In this document: positions 20,016-25,444 of the stretch, piece by piece
How positions within the stretch are numbered: the stretch's first letter is position 1
Layout: each line of letters begins with the position of its first letter
IMG/VR virus record: IMGVR_UViG_3300033997_000136
Coordinates: 1 to 64,000 of that record
Strand: one strand, 5' to 3'
Length of the DNA: 64,000 bases
The notes under the pieces: model-generated
The model's database searches: none
Told to the model about the DNA's origin: nothing
What the model saw: the letters and a program-made list of their open reading frames with translations, nothing else
Made by a program: the position numbers and the translations under genes

Positions 20016-21634
20016 CCGTAAACGAAACCAACGGGATTGGTGAGTACAATCCTAATGAACCTTTTTTGGCAGACACAGACACAACTGTGCAAGCTGTAGA
20101 AGTTCCAAAAGACGAACCGTCACCAGCTCCCGCAGATGACCAGTCTGTTAACACCGAAGTTTCATCAGACTCTGACGATGAAACTACATCAGACGACGAC
20201 AGTGAATCCTCAGTCACTGAAAGACCATCTGTTCTTCGTGCGTATGAAATACCAGCAGGTCGTCATCCATTTGTCTTATCTATTCCATCGGATGGTAAAC
20301 ACGACGAACCATTGGTTGTACTGACCATCAGTAAAACTGACTTTAAAGAAATCCGTGATTTAACGGAAAAGAAAATTGTCAGCGGCGATAAAATCAATCA
20401 ATGGGTTGAAGCCACCACCATTGCATTAGGTCAGTATCATTCGGACGATGTTACTCACCACTTCGAACGTGAAGGTAGTGATTGGACAAACCAAGTAAAA
20501 CACGGTGATGTCACCATTGGTCCAAAACGTTCAAAGTTTAACGTCAGTAAACGCGCAAACTCAGTAGTCAGCGGTGAAGATGCATTGTTATTAGCGCGTC
20601 AATCTGCAAACCTGGGTACAACGTTAGACTTCCCATTATTCCACACTGGGATTCGTTTGGGTATTCGTGCACCACTGGATGCTGAGTTGTTACAGGTTGA
20701 ACAGGCTATCAGTTTAGATAAAATAAACTTAGGCCGTCGTACAGCCGGTGCTTCGTTTGCGAACACCAGTATCTACATGTTTAAACATGCGGTGGATTTA
20801 GCATTACGTAAAGTGTTTCACACCAACTATGAGTCTGTAGTTGCTGAAGACTTGCGTAAAGTTATTCGTGTGACTGACGTACCTCGTCTGTTAGCATCCA
20901 TGATGATTACTGTGTACCCACACGGGTATTACATGGTTCGCCCGTGTGTGTCTAACCCTGAAAAGTGTACACACATTGATGAAGGTACGGTGAACTTAAA
21001 CCACATGCTTCAAACGGATGATGCATCGTTAACAGCTATCCAAAAAGCAATGTTGTTATCTGATGCAGCAATGACAGCAGACCGTCTTGAGACGTATCAG
21101 AACGCACACGTAGCGAAACAAATCGATCGCGTTGAGTTGATGGAAGGTATCTGGTTGCATCTGGAAGTCCCCACCATCCAGACGTTTATGGATTCAGGTC
21201 GCCGTTGGGTAGACGGTATTGTTGAAATGATTAAAGAAACGTTCAAACAAGAACCTTCTGAAAAAGAGCGCGATGCGTTCATCCTTCAACAAGCCATGGT
21301 TACACGGATGCGTCGTTACGCACACTGGATTAAGAAAATCGAGTATGTAGATGAAATCTTTGTTACCGATGTACTTGACATTGAACGTACGCTAAATGAG
21401 TGGTCTGGTGAAGATGATTTGTACAAAACGTATAAAGAGAAAATCGAAACGTTCATTAGCAACGCGACGATTGATGCGTTTGGTATTCCGTACCACACCT
21501 GTACAAAGTGTAAATCTGAACCTCACCCAGCGTTCAAGTTAAAGAACTTAGAACACTTGATTGCAGTGGATGCGTTAGAGTGTTTTTTTACCCTACTGTC
21601 CCGCCGTTCATCCAAGACACTAACCAGAATCTAG
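20012..21634 (+). CDS. Conserved tail-assembly-chaperone / baseplate-hub-assembly-like protein (frameshift G-type product)
   Basis: 540 aa; acidic N-terminus; IRAP..E motif; two Cys clusters (PCVSNPEKC, CTKC); ends shortly after a TTTTTTT slippery run. Confidence 0.6.
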   Translation: MTVNETNGIGEYNPNEPFLADTDTTVQAVEVPKDEPSPAPADDQSVNTEVSSDSDDETTSDDDSESSVTERPSVLRAYEIPAGRHPFVLSIPSDGKHDEPLVVLTISKTDFKEIRDLTEKKIVSGDKINQWVEATTIALGQYHSDDVTHHFEREGSDWTNQVKHGDVTIGPKRSKFNVSKRANSVVSGEDALLLARQSANLGTTLDFPLFHTGIRLGIRAPLDAELLQVEQAISLDKINLGRRTAGASFANTSIYMFKHAVDLALRKVFHTNYESVVAEDLRKVIRVTDVPRLLASMMITVYPHGYYMVRPCVSNPEKCTHIDEGTVNLNHMLQTDDASLTAIQKAMLLSDAAMTADRLETYQNAHVAKQIDRVELMEGIWLHLEVPTIQTFMDSGRRWVDGIVEMIKETFKQEPSEKERDAFILQQAMVTRMRRYAHWIKKIEYVDEIFVTDVLDIERTLNEWSGEDDLYKTYKEKIETFISNATIDAFGIPYHTCTKCKSEPHPAFKLKNLEHLIAVDALECFFTLLSRRSSKTLTRI

Positions 21635-22074
21635 AGGCTCCTGACAGTCATGTGCTGTCTCCTCAGTTTGGTCAGAAGGAATTCTTTAACACACCTCAGG
21701 TTTCAAATACGTTACGACACTATCACACGCACGATTCTGTGCTTGCTGGACAAGTGCTCGGGATGGCGTATGACATGGACTACGGAATACATGACCACAC
21801 CAAAGACCCACATCCATGGTCTGGTATCATCCTTCACCCAAAAGAGGATATTCGAAAGATAGATCCATTTCGTTTATCCCTTGATAAGTTTTTAAAGAAC
21901 AACGTCAAGGAACTCACAGGGTATACACATCGTGAATTCACGATGTTAGAACGAAGCCATCAACAATTAATTATTGATGCGTTAGTTCACTACAAGGATT
22001 ATGTTGCACGTCTTCAAGAAGAAGCCAAACGTAAAGCTGAGGCTGAGAAAGAGAAGAAAGGTAAGGACAGGTAA
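21580..22074 (+). CDS. Overlapping -1 frame ORF; probable frameshift extension (GT-like) or GTG-initiated protein
   Basis: 164 codons with no ATG before codon 63; ELTGYTHREFTML pattern resembles chaperone extensions. Confidence 0.65.
   Translation: MFFYPTVPPFIQDTNQNLEAPDSHVLSPQFGQKEFFNTPQVSNTLRHYHTHDSVLAGQVLGMAYDMDYGIHDHTKDPHPWSGIILHPKEDIRKIDPFRLSLDKFLKNNVKELTGYTHREFTMLERSHQQLIIDALVHYKDYVARLQEEAKRKAEAEKEKKGKDR
21583..21589 (+). other. Candidate programmed -1 ribosomal frameshift heptamer U-UUU-UUU
   Basis: GAG TGT TTT TTT ACC in the frame of 20012..21634; the -1 frame GTG TTT TTT TAC CCT opens ORF 21580..22074. Confidence 0.6.
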
Positions 22075-22081
22075 TATTGAT

Positions 22082-22114
22082 GTCGTAGGGTCATCCCTAC
22101 GACTCTTTTATATG
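22082..22114 (+). terminator. Intrinsic terminator followed by TATG
   Basis: gtcgtaggg-tcat-ccctacgac then tctttta; TATG at 22111-22114. Confidence 0.7.
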
Positions 22115-22121
22115 TTTTTTC

Positions 22122-22142
22122 AAATATATATCATTGTTGTGT
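22122..22142 (+). promoter_or_regulatory. Putative early promoter motif, copy 3
   Basis: aaatatatatcattgttgtgt. Confidence 0.55.
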
Positions 22143-22180: not shown

Positions 22181-23263
22181 ATGGAACACTTTAATCAGTT
22201 ATATCGCAATAAAGAAACAGGTAAATTAATCGCTGTACTTCGCAGCCAACCAGTTATGAATCAAGACGCTAGTGCGTTATTGGTTTACGCAGATAACTAC
22301 CCAGCAGTGATTAGTCGCGAACAGTTCGCTGCCGATTATGAGTTCTTTGAAACTCTGATTCCAATCACTATTCAAAACGCCGTGGGTATTCCGGTAAATC
22401 CACCACCAGGCAAATCGGTTGAAGAGCACCGTGAAGTCATCAATGGTTTGTACGATAGCATTTTACAAAGTGCTATTAACATCACAGCTATTTCATGTAT
22501 CCCATTTGAAATAGATACAAATGCCACCAACAACAAACTGGGACACACTCAGTTAAACGATACTAACTTTATCGGTTACTGGGTGACTGCGCATGTATCC
22601 AGCGCCAGCTTAAGTAAAGAAACTAACATGTGGCATATCCCTGTTGAGCTGGGTGGCTTCCTGTGTGAGTCGAAGTATCGTGAATTAAACAATATCGCTG
22701 ATTCTGTGACTACAGATGAGCTGTTTAACCACATCCTTCCACCTAACTTGAAAATTATGGTGCCAGATACCAATGGTGAAGCATGGCAACCTCCTGTGGC
22801 AATTACATGGGATATTCCTGTGTTTATCCCACAGATGTTTGATGAAGCGTTGCACAATGAAGCAGCGTCTGCAACAGACATGAATCAAGCGGTACTGGCT
22901 GCGTTATCAGGTGGTGAAGAGCAAGACATTGGCGAATTGGATGGTCATCAAGACCCACAGTTAGACCAACGTCACTTAGACCGTTCGGGTGATGCTGAAC
23001 ACAGTTTAGACCCAGCTCTGGTTGACGCAGTTCACGGTTTATCCGATGAGACAAAAGCTGCCTTAAAGGAAGGGTTACCTGAAGTGCTGGGAACTCTGGA
23101 AGGTGTCATAGCCAAACACACCACGGATGATTTTGATTTGGATAATTTTAATCCAGATGAATCTCAGTTGCAGTCTATCGCTGAACAACAGGCTGTTGCA
23201 GTTGATTCTGAAGAAGCCATTGAAGCATCTAACGATTGTGAAGATGGTGCGTGTAAAATCTAA
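22181..23263 (+). CDS. Hypothetical protein with acidic linker and NrdA-like C-terminal Cys pair
   Basis: 360 aa; N-terminus LYRNKETG resembles DUF1653-type starts; ends NDCEDGACKI. Confidence 0.75.
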   Translation: MEHFNQLYRNKETGKLIAVLRSQPVMNQDASALLVYADNYPAVISREQFAADYEFFETLIPITIQNAVGIPVNPPPGKSVEEHREVINGLYDSILQSAINITAISCIPFEIDTNATNNKLGHTQLNDTNFIGYWVTAHVSSASLSKETNMWHIPVELGGFLCESKYRELNNIADSVTTDELFNHILPPNLKIMVPDTNGEAWQPPVAITWDIPVFIPQMFDEALHNEAASATDMNQAVLAALSGGEEQDIGELDGHQDPQLDQRHLDRSGDAEHSLDPALVDAVHGLSDETKAALKEGLPEVLGTLEGVIAKHTTDDFDLDNFNPDESQLQSIAEQQAVAVDSEEAIEASNDCEDGACKI

Positions 23264-23269
23264 GTAGTC

Positions 23270-23313
23270 AGATAGAGAAGGAGCACACGCTCCTTCTCTA
23301 TCTTCTTTGTTTT
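23270..23313 (+). terminator. Intrinsic terminator
   Basis: agatagagaaggagc-acac-gctccttctctatct (15-bp perfect stem) then tctttgtttt. Confidence 0.8.
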
Positions 23314-23324
23314 AAAACTTTTTT

Positions 23325-23345
23325 AAACCTATATCACTAACGTGA
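23325..23345 (+). promoter_or_regulatory. Putative early promoter motif, copy 4
   Basis: aaacctatatcactaacgtga. Confidence 0.6.
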
Positions 23346-24772: not shown

Positions 24773-25444
24773 ATGTCAGATGAAAATAACGATGTAGGAA
24801 TTAGTCTAGAGCTTCTGGGTGAAGAAAACGCACTTAGTCCACTTAAAATGCGCGAATACAACTATCCGGGTATTCTGCCAGATTCAGAAATACGTCGTAT
24901 GTGTTTTCCATTCAACGACAATGAGAAACCATTGTTAACACCATTTGCTGAACGTACATCAGTGAATGATAAAGGTGCGCGTATCCCAAGCTACGGTATT
25001 TCATCAATGGGGTATGACATTCGTTTAGCACCTGAGTGGAAGTTGTTTGATAGACCTGAAGAAGGGACGATTGACATTCTCAATCCACAACCAGGTCGTT
25101 ATGTGACAGAATCCTCTGGGGAATGGATAATCATCCCACCAGGTACAACGGTGTTGTCGCGTAGTGTTGAATACTTTAACCTTCCTAACGATGTGTTTGG
25201 TATTTGTACAGGTAAATCCACATTGGCTCGTTTAGGGTTAGATGTGTTGGTTTCTCCTTTGGAACCGGGTTGGTCAGGTCATCTCGTGGTAGAGATTGCT
25301 AACAACACCCCGAATCCAATTCGTATGTATGCAGACATCGGTGTGAGTCAGCTTGTCTTCTTCCGTTCACGGTATGCTCCTGATAAAGCGTACACAGGCG
25401 GAAAGTACGATAAGCAAGAAGGGATTACTGAATCCCTTTTATAA
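24773..25444 (+). CDS. dcd: dCTP deaminase
   Basis: SSMGYDIRL, GKSTLARLGL, LEPGWSGHLVVEIAN, SQLVFF, GKYDKQEGIT. Confidence 0.93.
   Translation: MSDENNDVGISLELLGEENALSPLKMREYNYPGILPDSEIRRMCFPFNDNEKPLLTPFAERTSVNDKGARIPSYGISSMGYDIRLAPEWKLFDRPEEGTIDILNPQPGRYVTESSGEWIIIPPGTTVLSRSVEYFNLPNDVFGICTGKSTLARLGLDVLVSPLEPGWSGHLVVEIANNTPNPIRMYADIGVSQLVFFRSRYAPDKAYTGGKYDKQEGITESLL

What the first reader, a model, noticed from the sequence alone, without database searches (positions are those of the whole stretch)
23237..23263. Hypothetical early protein ends in a near-copy of the ribonucleotide reductase redox tail (CEDGACKI)
Seen: ORF 22181..23263 ends, after a long acidic flexible linker, in CEDGACKI. Known: E. 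coli NrdA ends in CESGACKI, whose Cys754/Cys759 shuttle electrons from thioredoxin/glutaredoxin to the active site (7 of 8 identical). I see no RNR catalytic motif in the rest of the protein. It has its own early promoter motif and lies two genes upstream of dcd. Inference: a stand-alone redox arm that recharges an RNR or other enzyme in trans, a Trx/Grx decoy or tether, or a captured NrdA tail.
Basis: partly seen in the sequence, partly recalled or inferred. Interest (0 to 1): 0.68.

Follow-up and report, generated by a model that had tools for sequence, protein, structure and literature searches.

The report
Stand-alone copy of RNR redox tail
A jumbo-phage protein ends in a faithful copy of the flexible two-cysteine tail of the bacterial ribonucleotide reductase large subunit, and this tail turns out to be a portable, undescribed module carried by about 200 different small acidic proteins of phages that have no reductase of their own, and by a few bacteria.

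Summary
ORF 22181..23263 (360 aa) ends in CEDGACKI, 7 of 8 residues identical to the C-terminus of enterobacterial NrdA, and the match extends to the acidic residues before the first Cys.

It is neither chance nor a gene remnant:
- The last 15 codons differ only synonymously among three close homologs.
- A positional ortholog with about 25% identity keeps a Cys pair.
- A motif scan plus a profile search found about 200 distinct proteins ending the same way. Their median length is 50 aa, about 30% of residues are Asp or Glu, and all are annotated "hypothetical".
- The tail is also attached to unrelated N-terminal domains.

None of 41 viral records with such a protein encodes an RNR large subunit, and none of the 36 tested encodes a small subunit or a class III enzyme. 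None of 18 RNR-encoding records has a stand-alone copy.

Bacterial copies lie between iscS and iscU in Neisseria and Eikenella.

Many members, weakly including the target, also carry an upstream motif resembling the NrdB C-terminus. My best reading is a mimic module aimed at the host class Ia RNR and its thioredoxin/glutaredoxin relay, probably docking on NrdA. Whether it inhibits or boosts the enzyme is unresolved. No binding was shown.

The parts
22082..22103 (+). Terminator-like hairpin plus T-run that closes the upstream gene, making the tail gene its own transcription unit
   Evidence: 9 pairs, 6 GC, T-rich tail
22122..22141 (+). Intergenic motif (AAA..TATATCA..GTG), candidate phage promoter; a second copy lies at 23325-23344
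   Evidence: five + strand intergenic copies in the genome (9506, 22127, 23330, 97225, 102009); the shorter test pattern alone is not enriched in the window
22181..23263 (+). CDS of the 360-aa tail-bearing protein (P0001)
   Evidence: syntenic orthologs
22181..22354 (+). Residues 1-58: small SH3/Tudor-like beta-barrel (model only, weak matches)
   Evidence: Z up to 6.6, below the noise level stated by the tool
22358..22825 (+). Residues 60-215: alpha+beta, ferredoxin-like domain with the invariant Cys106-x-Pro-Phe-Glu
22877..23113 (+). Residues 233-311: variable acidic linker, partly deleted in P0003 and poorly conserved
23126..23164 (+). Residues 316-328: invariant acidic/aromatic motif (DDFDLDNFNPDES), start of the portable module; resembles the NrdB C-terminus (..DDLSNFQL)
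   Evidence: (shuffle p = 0.06 for the target)
23231..23263 (+). Residues 351-360 (N-D-C-E-D-G-A-C-K-I) plus stop: copy of the class Ia NrdA redox tail, Cys353 and Cys358
23270..23303 (+). Strong terminator-like hairpin directly after the stop codon
   Evidence: 15 pairs, 7 GC
24773..25444 (+). dCTP deaminase gene: conserved downstream neighbour (context, not part of the module)

Best explanation
The last ~50 residues of this protein (about 308-360) are one copy of a portable, previously undescribed acidic module. The module's C-terminal 11 residues imitate the redox tail of proteobacterial class Ia NrdA. Its start often imitates the C-terminus of NrdB, the peptide that anchors the small subunit on NrdA. 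I propose that the module is aimed at the HOST class Ia ribonucleotide reductase. In this model the aromatic/acidic motif docks on NrdA where the NrdB tail binds, and the flexible Cys-x4-Cys end reaches the NrdA active site or the thioredoxin/glutaredoxin that serves it. The module would thereby compete with the enzyme's own tail and subunit contact. The most natural outcome is inhibition or throttling of host dNTP synthesis, in the manner of yeast Sml1. In the target, the module additionally tethers a two-domain N-terminal part of unknown function to that site. Shown: the mimicry, its conservation, its portability, and its restriction to RNR-less phages. Inferred: every binding step and the sign of the effect.
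For: 1. Extent of the copy: in 205 distinct family members, the positions before the first Cys are Asp (161) and then Gly/Asp/Glu, as in NrdA's ..DDGC. A profile of 18 modules hits the C-terminus of NrdA itself in 18 of 18 RNR-encoding viral records, with E from 1e-4 to 8e-8 per genome.
2. Selection: there are only synonymous differences in the last 15 codons and in the upstream motif among P0001-3, against 12-13 non-synonymous differences across the last 50 codons, all of them outside these two conserved stretches. The ~25%-identical syntenic ortholog P0005 keeps both elements.
3. Portability: the same ending sits on free peptides of about 40-60 aa, a zinc ribbon, an N4 gp49-type domain, and 123-aa and 263-aa proteins.
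4. Link to RNR: 0 of 41 carrier records have PF02867. 0 of the 36 records tested have NrdB or NrdD, and 22 of these records are at least 90% complete. A review states that RNR beta is conserved in over half of jumbo phages (PMC13282480). Conversely, 0 of 18 RNR-encoding records have a stand-alone module.
5. NrdB-like start: 11-12 of 47 family representatives score p<0.05 against composition-preserving shuffles with a matrix built from 44 NrdB C-termini, where 2.4 are expected. One marine phage peptide carries a 7-mer identical to the NrdB end of Shewanella and Alteromonadaceae.
6. From established knowledge, not tested here: NrdB C-terminal peptides are competitive RNR inhibitors; the NrdA tail peptide is a Grx1/Trx substrate; and Sml1 acts by competing with the R1 tail.
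Against: No interaction was demonstrated; the one complex prediction gave no answer. The NrdB-like signal is heterogeneous. It is absent from the Alexandravirus group, only p = 0.06 in the target, and forward versus reversed matrices do not differ for 7- and 8-residue windows, so it may be a generic acidic-hydrophobic motif. In NrdB the motif needs a free C-terminus, whereas here it is internal. It is not obvious why a phage that depends on host dNTP synthesis would inhibit it. Bacterial copies sit in the isc (Fe-S) operon, not beside nrdAB, which could point to another client. Where checked, the tail is not an exact copy of the cognate NrdA tail (Neisseria, Paenalcaligenes-like genome). The sister clade P0004/P0078 has no cysteines. 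RNR-less phages without the module exist, for example Goslar. The RNR-absence argument rests on perhaps 8-10 independent lineages.
Confidence: 0.4

Rival explanations
1. Auxiliary reductant arm that boosts the host RNR. The module docks near the NrdA active site, reduces the active-site disulfide in trans and is recharged by host Trx/Grx. This would raise turnover for a phage that must rely on the host enzyme.
For: Carriers are exactly the phages that lack their own RNR and therefore profit from more host activity. The dithiol spacing and flanking residues needed for Trx/Grx recharge are kept. From established knowledge: re-reduction limits steady-state turnover of E. coli RNR, and small dithiols can reduce the active site directly.
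Against: NrdA already has two tails per dimer. A docking motif at the NrdB site would block radical transfer. No Trx/Grx gene accompanies it in the 213 kb. No kinetic evidence.
Confidence: 0.2
2. The real target is thioredoxin/glutaredoxin. The tail is a decoy substrate, trap or recruiting tag for the host redoxins, and RNR is affected only indirectly or not at all.
For: The only invariant part of the family is the part that redoxins recognise in NrdA. The tail is attached to many unrelated domains, as a recruiting tag would be. Bacterial copies lie in thiol/Fe-S stress contexts: the isc operon, or beside an Rrf2 regulator and an OYE-type flavoenzyme.
Against: It does not explain the recurrent NrdB-like start or the exclusion from RNR-encoding phages. 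A freely reducible dithiol peptide is a poor trap unless it binds tightly.
Confidence: 0.17
3. Cis-acting redox arm. The tail swings back to re-reduce a catalytic cysteine (Cys106) of the protein's own N-terminal domain, as in RNR, PAPS reductase or methionine sulfoxide reductases.
For: Cys106-x-Pro-Phe-Glu is invariant in all six family members. A long flexible linker separates the domain from the tail.
Against: The sister clade keeps Cys106 but has no Cys tail. Most family members are bare peptides with no domain to serve. The N-domain model resembles no known thiol enzyme.
Confidence: 0.08
4. A function unrelated to RNR and redoxins: a RiPP-like precursor (acidic FxLD-type leader plus Cys core), a metal or Fe-S ligand, or a sulfur acceptor for IscS.
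For: One UniRef entry of the Neisseria peptide is auto-named 'FxLD family lantipeptide'. The acidic leader-like start and the position between iscS and iscU fit this.
Against: NCBIfam gave no lanthipeptide hit at E up to 1. The commonest core has no Ser/Thr. No modifying enzymes were seen next to the phage or Neisseria genes. An 11-residue identity with NrdA would be unexplained.
Confidence: 0.08
5. Chance resemblance, or a decaying remnant of a lost phage nrdA fused to a neighbouring ORF.
For: Short motif; phages often lose and gain nrd genes.
Against: Purifying selection on the tail, conservation at about 25% identity, about 200 independent non-RNR carriers, no NrdA-like sequence upstream of the tail, and zero genomic sources of the Asp variant.
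Confidence: 0.02

Closest known systems
C-terminal redox tail of class Ia NrdA (E. coli Cys754/Cys759)
   Same: Same last 11 residues in pattern (Asp, Gly/Asp, Cys, Glu, x, Gly, Ala, Cys, Lys, Ile), same position at the free C-terminus, and the same acidic flexible lead-in.
   Different: Not attached to an RNR barrel, and encoded by genomes without any RNR. The lead-in carries an extra aromatic/acidic motif that NrdA lacks.
Sml1 / Spd1 / Hug1 / Dif1, small intrinsically disordered RNR regulators of yeasts
   Same: Small, disordered and acidic. Proposed to act on the large subunit by competing with its C-terminal tail (my knowledge of Sml1; not tested here).
   Different: No sequence relation. 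Sml1 does not copy the tail or carry the Cys pair. It is eukaryotic and checkpoint-regulated. The action of the phage module is unproven.
NrdB (R2) C-terminal peptide inhibitors, e.g. the E. coli R2 C-terminal peptides and the herpesvirus R2 nonapeptide
   Same: A subset of modules begins with a close match to the NrdB C-terminal heptapeptide.
   Different: Those are synthetic peptides with a free C-terminus. Here the motif is internal, usually followed by Pro, and coupled to a second mimic element.
Phage use of host thioredoxin (T7 gp5 thioredoxin-binding loop; phage-encoded NrdC/NrdH redoxins)
   Same: Phage proteins that engage the host thiol-redox proteins.
   Different: T7 gp5 binds Trx without a Cys tail. 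NrdC/NrdH are redoxins that accompany phage RNRs, whereas this module occurs only without a phage RNR.
FxLD-type lanthipeptide precursors
   Same: Acidic leader with Phe/Leu-x-Leu-Asp-like motif and a Cys-containing C-terminal end; one database auto-name.
   Different: No family hit, no neighbouring LanB/LanC-type genes, and the core usually lacks Ser/Thr.

Membership tests
Ribonucleotide reductase large subunit (NrdA, class I/II) | Ten-stranded catalytic barrel (Pfam PF02867) with the radical and redox cysteines | tested here: not met
   No Pfam hit at E up to 0.1; the N-domain model is an SH3-like barrel plus a ferredoxin-like domain
Ribonucleotide reductase large subunit (NrdA, class I/II) | C-terminal Cys-x4-Cys (or CxxC) shuttle tail at the free C-terminus | tested here: met
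   the module profile matches NrdA ends
New 'NrdA-tail module' family (defined here; alignment A5) | Acidic region ending in Asp-(Gly/Asp/Glu)-Cys-Glu-x-Gly-Ala-Cys-Lys-Ile at the C-terminus of a non-RNR protein | tested here: met
   Target residues 308-360 align over the whole module with 17 others; closest in the stretch before the tail to the Paenalcaligenes and Klebsiella-phage peptides
New 'NrdA-tail module' family (defined here; alignment A5) | Upstream aromatic/acidic motif (hydrophobic-Asp-hydrophobic-Asp.., often then Pro-Asp), 17-32 residues before the first Cys in the 31 proteins scored, up to about 40 in the wider set | tested here: met
   Target 316-328, 26 residues before Cys353; invariant in P0001-3, and present in P0005
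New 'NrdA-tail module' family (defined here; alignment A5) | Carrier genome lacks its own RNR | tested here: inconclusive
   None found in 213 kb, but the record is 77% complete
Thioredoxin / glutaredoxin fold proteins | Trx fold with CxxC active site (PF00085, PF00462) | tested here: not met
   No hit in the protein or in the whole record
Sml1-type RNR inhibitor | Binds the large subunit and blocks regeneration of its active site | not testable with these tools
   Needs biochemistry; the single complex job returned no verdict (see Tried and rejected)
FxLD lanthipeptide precursor | Family model hit and adjacent dehydratase/cyclase genes | tested here: not met
   No NCBIfam hit at E up to 1; neighbours carry no such domains

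The most novel reading that the evidence does not exclude
Phages that lack a ribonucleotide reductase, and some Neisseriaceae, Moraxellaceae and Alcaligenaceae, encode a dedicated class of ~50-residue double mimics. One end copies the NrdB anchor peptide and the other copies the NrdA redox tail. These control the cell's class Ia RNR directly at the protein level. That would be the first protein regulators of a bacterial RNR: a prokaryotic and viral counterpart of Sml1, tied in bacteria to the Fe-S (IscR) stress regulon.
Probability: 0.3. Interest if true: 0.9.

Novelty: categorically new. Interest (0 to 1): 0.8.

Why it matters
RNR is the single gateway to DNA precursors and a drug target, yet no protein that regulates a bacterial RNR post-translationally is known to me. 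Five full-text literature searches of about 8.4 million papers found none, and none described stand-alone NrdA tails.

A family of natural peptides that copy the two flexible tails through which the enzyme is assembled and recharged would matter in three ways:
- It would give a new route by which phages take over host nucleotide metabolism.
- It would offer ready-made peptide leads and probes for class Ia RNR and for Trx/Grx specificity.
- It would suggest an unexpected link between Fe-S cluster stress and DNA precursor synthesis in Neisseria and its relatives.

The family is directly testable because cultured carriers exist: Erwinia phage Alexandra, Dickeya phage AD1, Serratia phage PCH45, and Klebsiella phages KpLz-2_45, Centimanus and Pylas.

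Tried and rejected
1. Nucleotide and translated searches of 50,697 GenBank phages with the whole protein found no match.
2. Word-index and exhaustive protein searches found only five relatives in all, so the N-terminal part is a rare lineage-specific domain.
3. AlphaFold2 of the full protein with 3 sequences gave pLDDT 37 and is unusable. The N-domain with 6 sequences gave pLDDT 66. Its Foldseek PDB and BFVD, VIA wide and ESM Atlas searches gave only sub-noise matches, and the MscS-like hits at TM about 0.2 were rejected. The ESM Atlas feature search gave no usable hit.
4. phmmer of the last 71 residues against PDB chains found nothing.
5. Complex prediction with E. coli NrdA 1-737 and target 305-360 returned 'no answer' (ipSAE 0.02, controls not run). 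It counts neither for nor against binding.
6. Host inference from the Asp variant of the tail failed: zero genomes encode it.
7. Co-variation of the last two tail residues with the cognate NrdA was not seen in the one genome tested.
8. The short promoter pattern alone is not enriched in the window.
9. The search for related loci with single proteins returned only the same phage.
10. One literature search on a tail fragment hit only surnames.
It was rerun with the peptides derived from the fetched loci.
13. I did not walk the 304,688-bp contig that holds the complete phage, so the missing 23% remains unchecked for RNR.

Full report
**The observation.** The window holds an ORF at 22181..23263 on the + strand. 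It encodes 360 residues that end in CEDGACKI, followed by TAA. To avoid relying on memory, I took real NrdA ends from a scan of one genome per bacterial species. Among 120 returned loci, 109 are NrdA proteins ending in CESGACKI (68) or CEGGACKI (41), nearly always preceded by two Asp and a Gly or Asp. The carriers are Enterobacterales, Vibrio, Shewanella, Pseudoalteromonas, Alcaligenaceae, Pasteurellaceae and others. The target reads Asn-Asp before the first Cys, so the resemblance covers 10-11 residues. No other ORF of at least 80 aa in the 213-kb record ends in this tail. The rest of the protein matches no Pfam, PHROG or NCBIfam model. The gene lies between two terminator-like hairpins. It follows an intergenic motif found at five + strand intergenic sites of the genome, including the site before the next gene. 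dcd lies one gene further downstream.

**The genome.** The record is an IMG/VR contig of 213,150 bp, estimated 77% complete; the same protein also occurs on a 304,688-bp contig. Its neighbour, a 540-aa protein, is a core protein of PhiKZ-type nucleus-forming jumbo phages such as Goslar, PhiPA3 and LucasX. In those phages the conserved block ends just before the position of our gene. The gene is therefore a lineage-specific addition. The record contains no class I/II large subunit, no small subunit, no class III RNR, and no thioredoxin or glutaredoxin.

**Is the tail selected?** Relatives are few. There are two close ones (P0002, P0003), a distant one (P0005, about 25% identity) and a sister pair (P0004, P0078).
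- P0002, P0003 and P0005 occupy the same place in the same gene order.
- Among P0001-3, the last 15 codons and the 13-codon aromatic/acidic motif at residues 316-328 differ only synonymously. All 12-13 amino-acid changes per pair in the last 50 codons fall outside these two conserved stretches, between and just before them. P0003 also has a 40-residue deletion further upstream.
- P0005 keeps both the aromatic/acidic motif and a Cys pair with Lys-Ile at the end, with one residue fewer between the cysteines.
- P0004 and P0078 keep the N-terminal domains, including the invariant Cys106, but end in an acidic stretch without cysteines.

The tail is thus under selection in the target's clade, but the N-terminal part can exist without it.

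**The unexpected result.** I scanned IMG/VR for DNA encoding Cys-Glu-x-Gly-Ala-Cys-Lys-Ile followed by a stop and obtained 63 loci. About 20 are true NrdA genes. The rest are short acidic ORFs of about 40-130 aa, plus one of 263 aa and the target itself. None has any NrdA sequence before the tail. They occur in these cultured phages, always as 'hypothetical protein':
- Erwinia phages Alexandra and Y3 and many pEa_SNUABM isolates
- Dickeya phage AD1
- Klebsiella phages KpLz-2_45, Centimanus, KPN8 and Pylas
- Serratia phage PCH45, which has a Glu-Ile variant of the end

An alignment of 18 such sequences, with target residues 308-360 included, shows one architecture:
- an aromatic/acidic motif near the start, often followed by Pro-Asp;
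- an acidic spacer;
- the tail.

A profile of this alignment retrieved 144 clusters at 90% identity. Together with the scan, this gives 205 distinct sequences with a median length of 50 aa and 30% Asp+Glu. The tail is also fused to a zinc ribbon, to an N4 gp49 / Sf6 gp66 domain (Pylas_064) and to other unassigned domains. Half of the large carrier genomes tested share the PhiKZ-type core protein and half do not. The module has therefore spread across unrelated phages.

**Relation to RNR.**
- None of 41 viral records with a stand-alone module has an RNR large subunit.
- None of the 36 tested has a small subunit or a class III enzyme. Twenty-two of these records are at least 90% complete, about 16 are larger than 200 kb, and they represent roughly eight lineages.
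- A recent review states that the RNR beta subunit is among seven gene clusters conserved in more than half of jumbo phages (PMC13282480).
- In the other direction, 18 viral records that do encode an NrdA with this tail type have no stand-alone module. The module profile hits only the NrdA end in each of them, which also demonstrates the similarity formally.
- Among four named jumbo phages: LucasX has RNR and no module; Alexandra and PCH45 have a module and no RNR; Goslar has neither.

The exclusion is suggestive, but it rests on a modest number of independent lineages.

**A second mimic element?** NrdB proteins of the same bacteria end in a conserved acidic/aromatic peptide (..DDLSNFQL in E. 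coli-like species; Phe-rich variants in marine genera). I built a matrix from 44 such ends and scored the part of each module before the tail against composition-preserving shuffles.
- 11-12 of 47 non-redundant representatives reach p<0.05, where 2.4 are expected (the earlier version is).
- One marine phage peptide starts with a 7-mer identical to the NrdB end of Shewanella and Alteromonadaceae.
- The target's motif (Asp-Leu-Asp-Asn-Phe against Asp-Leu-Ser-Asn-Phe) reaches only p = 0.06.
- The Alexandravirus group shows nothing, and a reversed-matrix control is not clearly worse.

I treat the NrdB mimicry as real for a subset and as a hypothesis for the target.

**Bacterial members.** The family is not confined to phages.
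- Neisseria (several species) and Eikenella carry a 42-48-aa member between iscS and iscU, downstream of iscR. The Neisseria cluster alone is seen on more than 1000 contigs.
- The Moraxella copy lies beside an Rrf2-type regulator and an OYE-type flavoenzyme.
- The Paenalcaligenes copy lies beside a LysR regulator.
- Neisseria NrdA ends in the same Asp-Asp-Gly-Cys-x-Gly-Gly-Ala-Cys-Lys-Ile pattern as its peptide.
- In a Paenalcaligenes-like genome, the peptide and the NrdA tail differ in the last residues, while the peptide's start resembles that genome's NrdB end.

These contexts tie the bacterial peptides to Fe-S and thiol stress regulons. They are the main reason to keep a client other than RNR in play.

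**The N-terminal part.** With six sequences, AlphaFold2 gives a moderately confident model (pLDDT 66, core 70-89). It shows an SH3/Tudor-like barrel (residues 1-58) and a ferredoxin-like alpha+beta domain (residues 60-215). Structure searches give only matches below the noise level stated by the tools. I assign it no function.

**Interpretation.** The following are shown:
- an 11-residue, C-terminal, selected copy of the NrdA redox tail on a non-RNR protein;
- its membership in a large undescribed family of portable modules;
- the absence of RNR genes from carrier phages.

It follows from established knowledge of class Ia RNR that such a tail is a substrate of thioredoxin and glutaredoxin, and a ligand of the NrdA active site, and that NrdB-end peptides bind NrdA and inhibit the enzyme. 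From this I infer that the module addresses the host RNR/redoxin relay, most likely by docking on NrdA.

The sign of the effect is open. Competition (inhibition, as with Sml1) is mechanistically simplest. A trans-acting reductant that boosts the host enzyme fits phage needs better. A pure Trx/Grx decoy or tag, a cis arm for Cys106, and an unrelated RiPP- or Fe-S-type role are the remaining rivals. Chance or gene decay is excluded in practice.

**Literature and novelty.** Five full-text searches found no description of stand-alone NrdA tails, of phage or bacterial protein regulators of RNR, or of the Neisseria isc peptide. PHROGs holds several small 'unknown function' families whose ends match the tail. 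Within the limits of that library, the module is new.

Noticed in passing
L151 5063-5191 (N. meningitidis), L077, L087, L154, L168, L205 4001-4147 (Eikenella): A 42-48 aa acidic peptide ending in the NrdA-type tail is encoded between iscS and iscU, downstream of iscR, in Neisseria and Eikenella. It is annotated hypothetical, and one UniRef entry is auto-named FxLD lantipeptide.
   Followed up: partly
L204 4001-4153 (Moraxella bovis); L206 4001-4132 and L207 (Paenalcaligenes-like): Further chromosomal members: one beside an Rrf2 regulator and an OYE-type flavoenzyme, one beside a LysR regulator. The Paenalcaligenes peptide ends in Ile-Ile, and its stretch before the tail is the closest match to the target's.
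   Followed up: partly
window 9506, 22127, 23330; genome 97225, 102009 (+ strand): Recurrent intergenic motif AAA..TATATCA..GTG just upstream of genes and after terminators: a candidate promoter of this phage, temporal class unknown.
   Followed up: partly
P0004, P0078 (contigs of 1 and 28 kb): A sister clade of the target protein keeps both N-terminal domains and Cys106 but has replaced the Cys tail with an acidic end (..ELDLN).
   Followed up: partly
L019 1249-1419 (-), 70-kb viral contig: A 57-aa zinc-ribbon protein carries the same rare Asp variant of the tail as the target.
   Followed up: no
L067 1193-1582 (Klebsiella phage Pylas_064): An N4 gp49 / Sf6 gp66 family domain (PF13876) is fused to the tail, with an Asp-Phe-Ser-Leu motif immediately before it.
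   Followed up: no
L029, L042 and the window's own record: Three different jumbo phage contigs (261, 320 and 213 kb) from the same metagenome (3300033997) each carry a different tail-bearing protein (40, 263 and 360 aa).
   Followed up: no
L033 (IMGVR_UViG_2541047228_000006), L013, L026, L035, L069: Some IMG/VR 'viral' contigs returned by the scan are really bacterial chromosome (Neisseria isc operon; E. coli-type nrdAB), probably over-extended prophage calls. They inflate the count of 'viral' NrdA genes.
   Followed up: partly
window 21580-22074 versus 21652-22074: The gene upstream of the target (phrog_12109) is called with different starts in different assemblies (164 versus 140 aa). The longer frame overlaps the end of the 540-aa core gene.
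   Followed up: no
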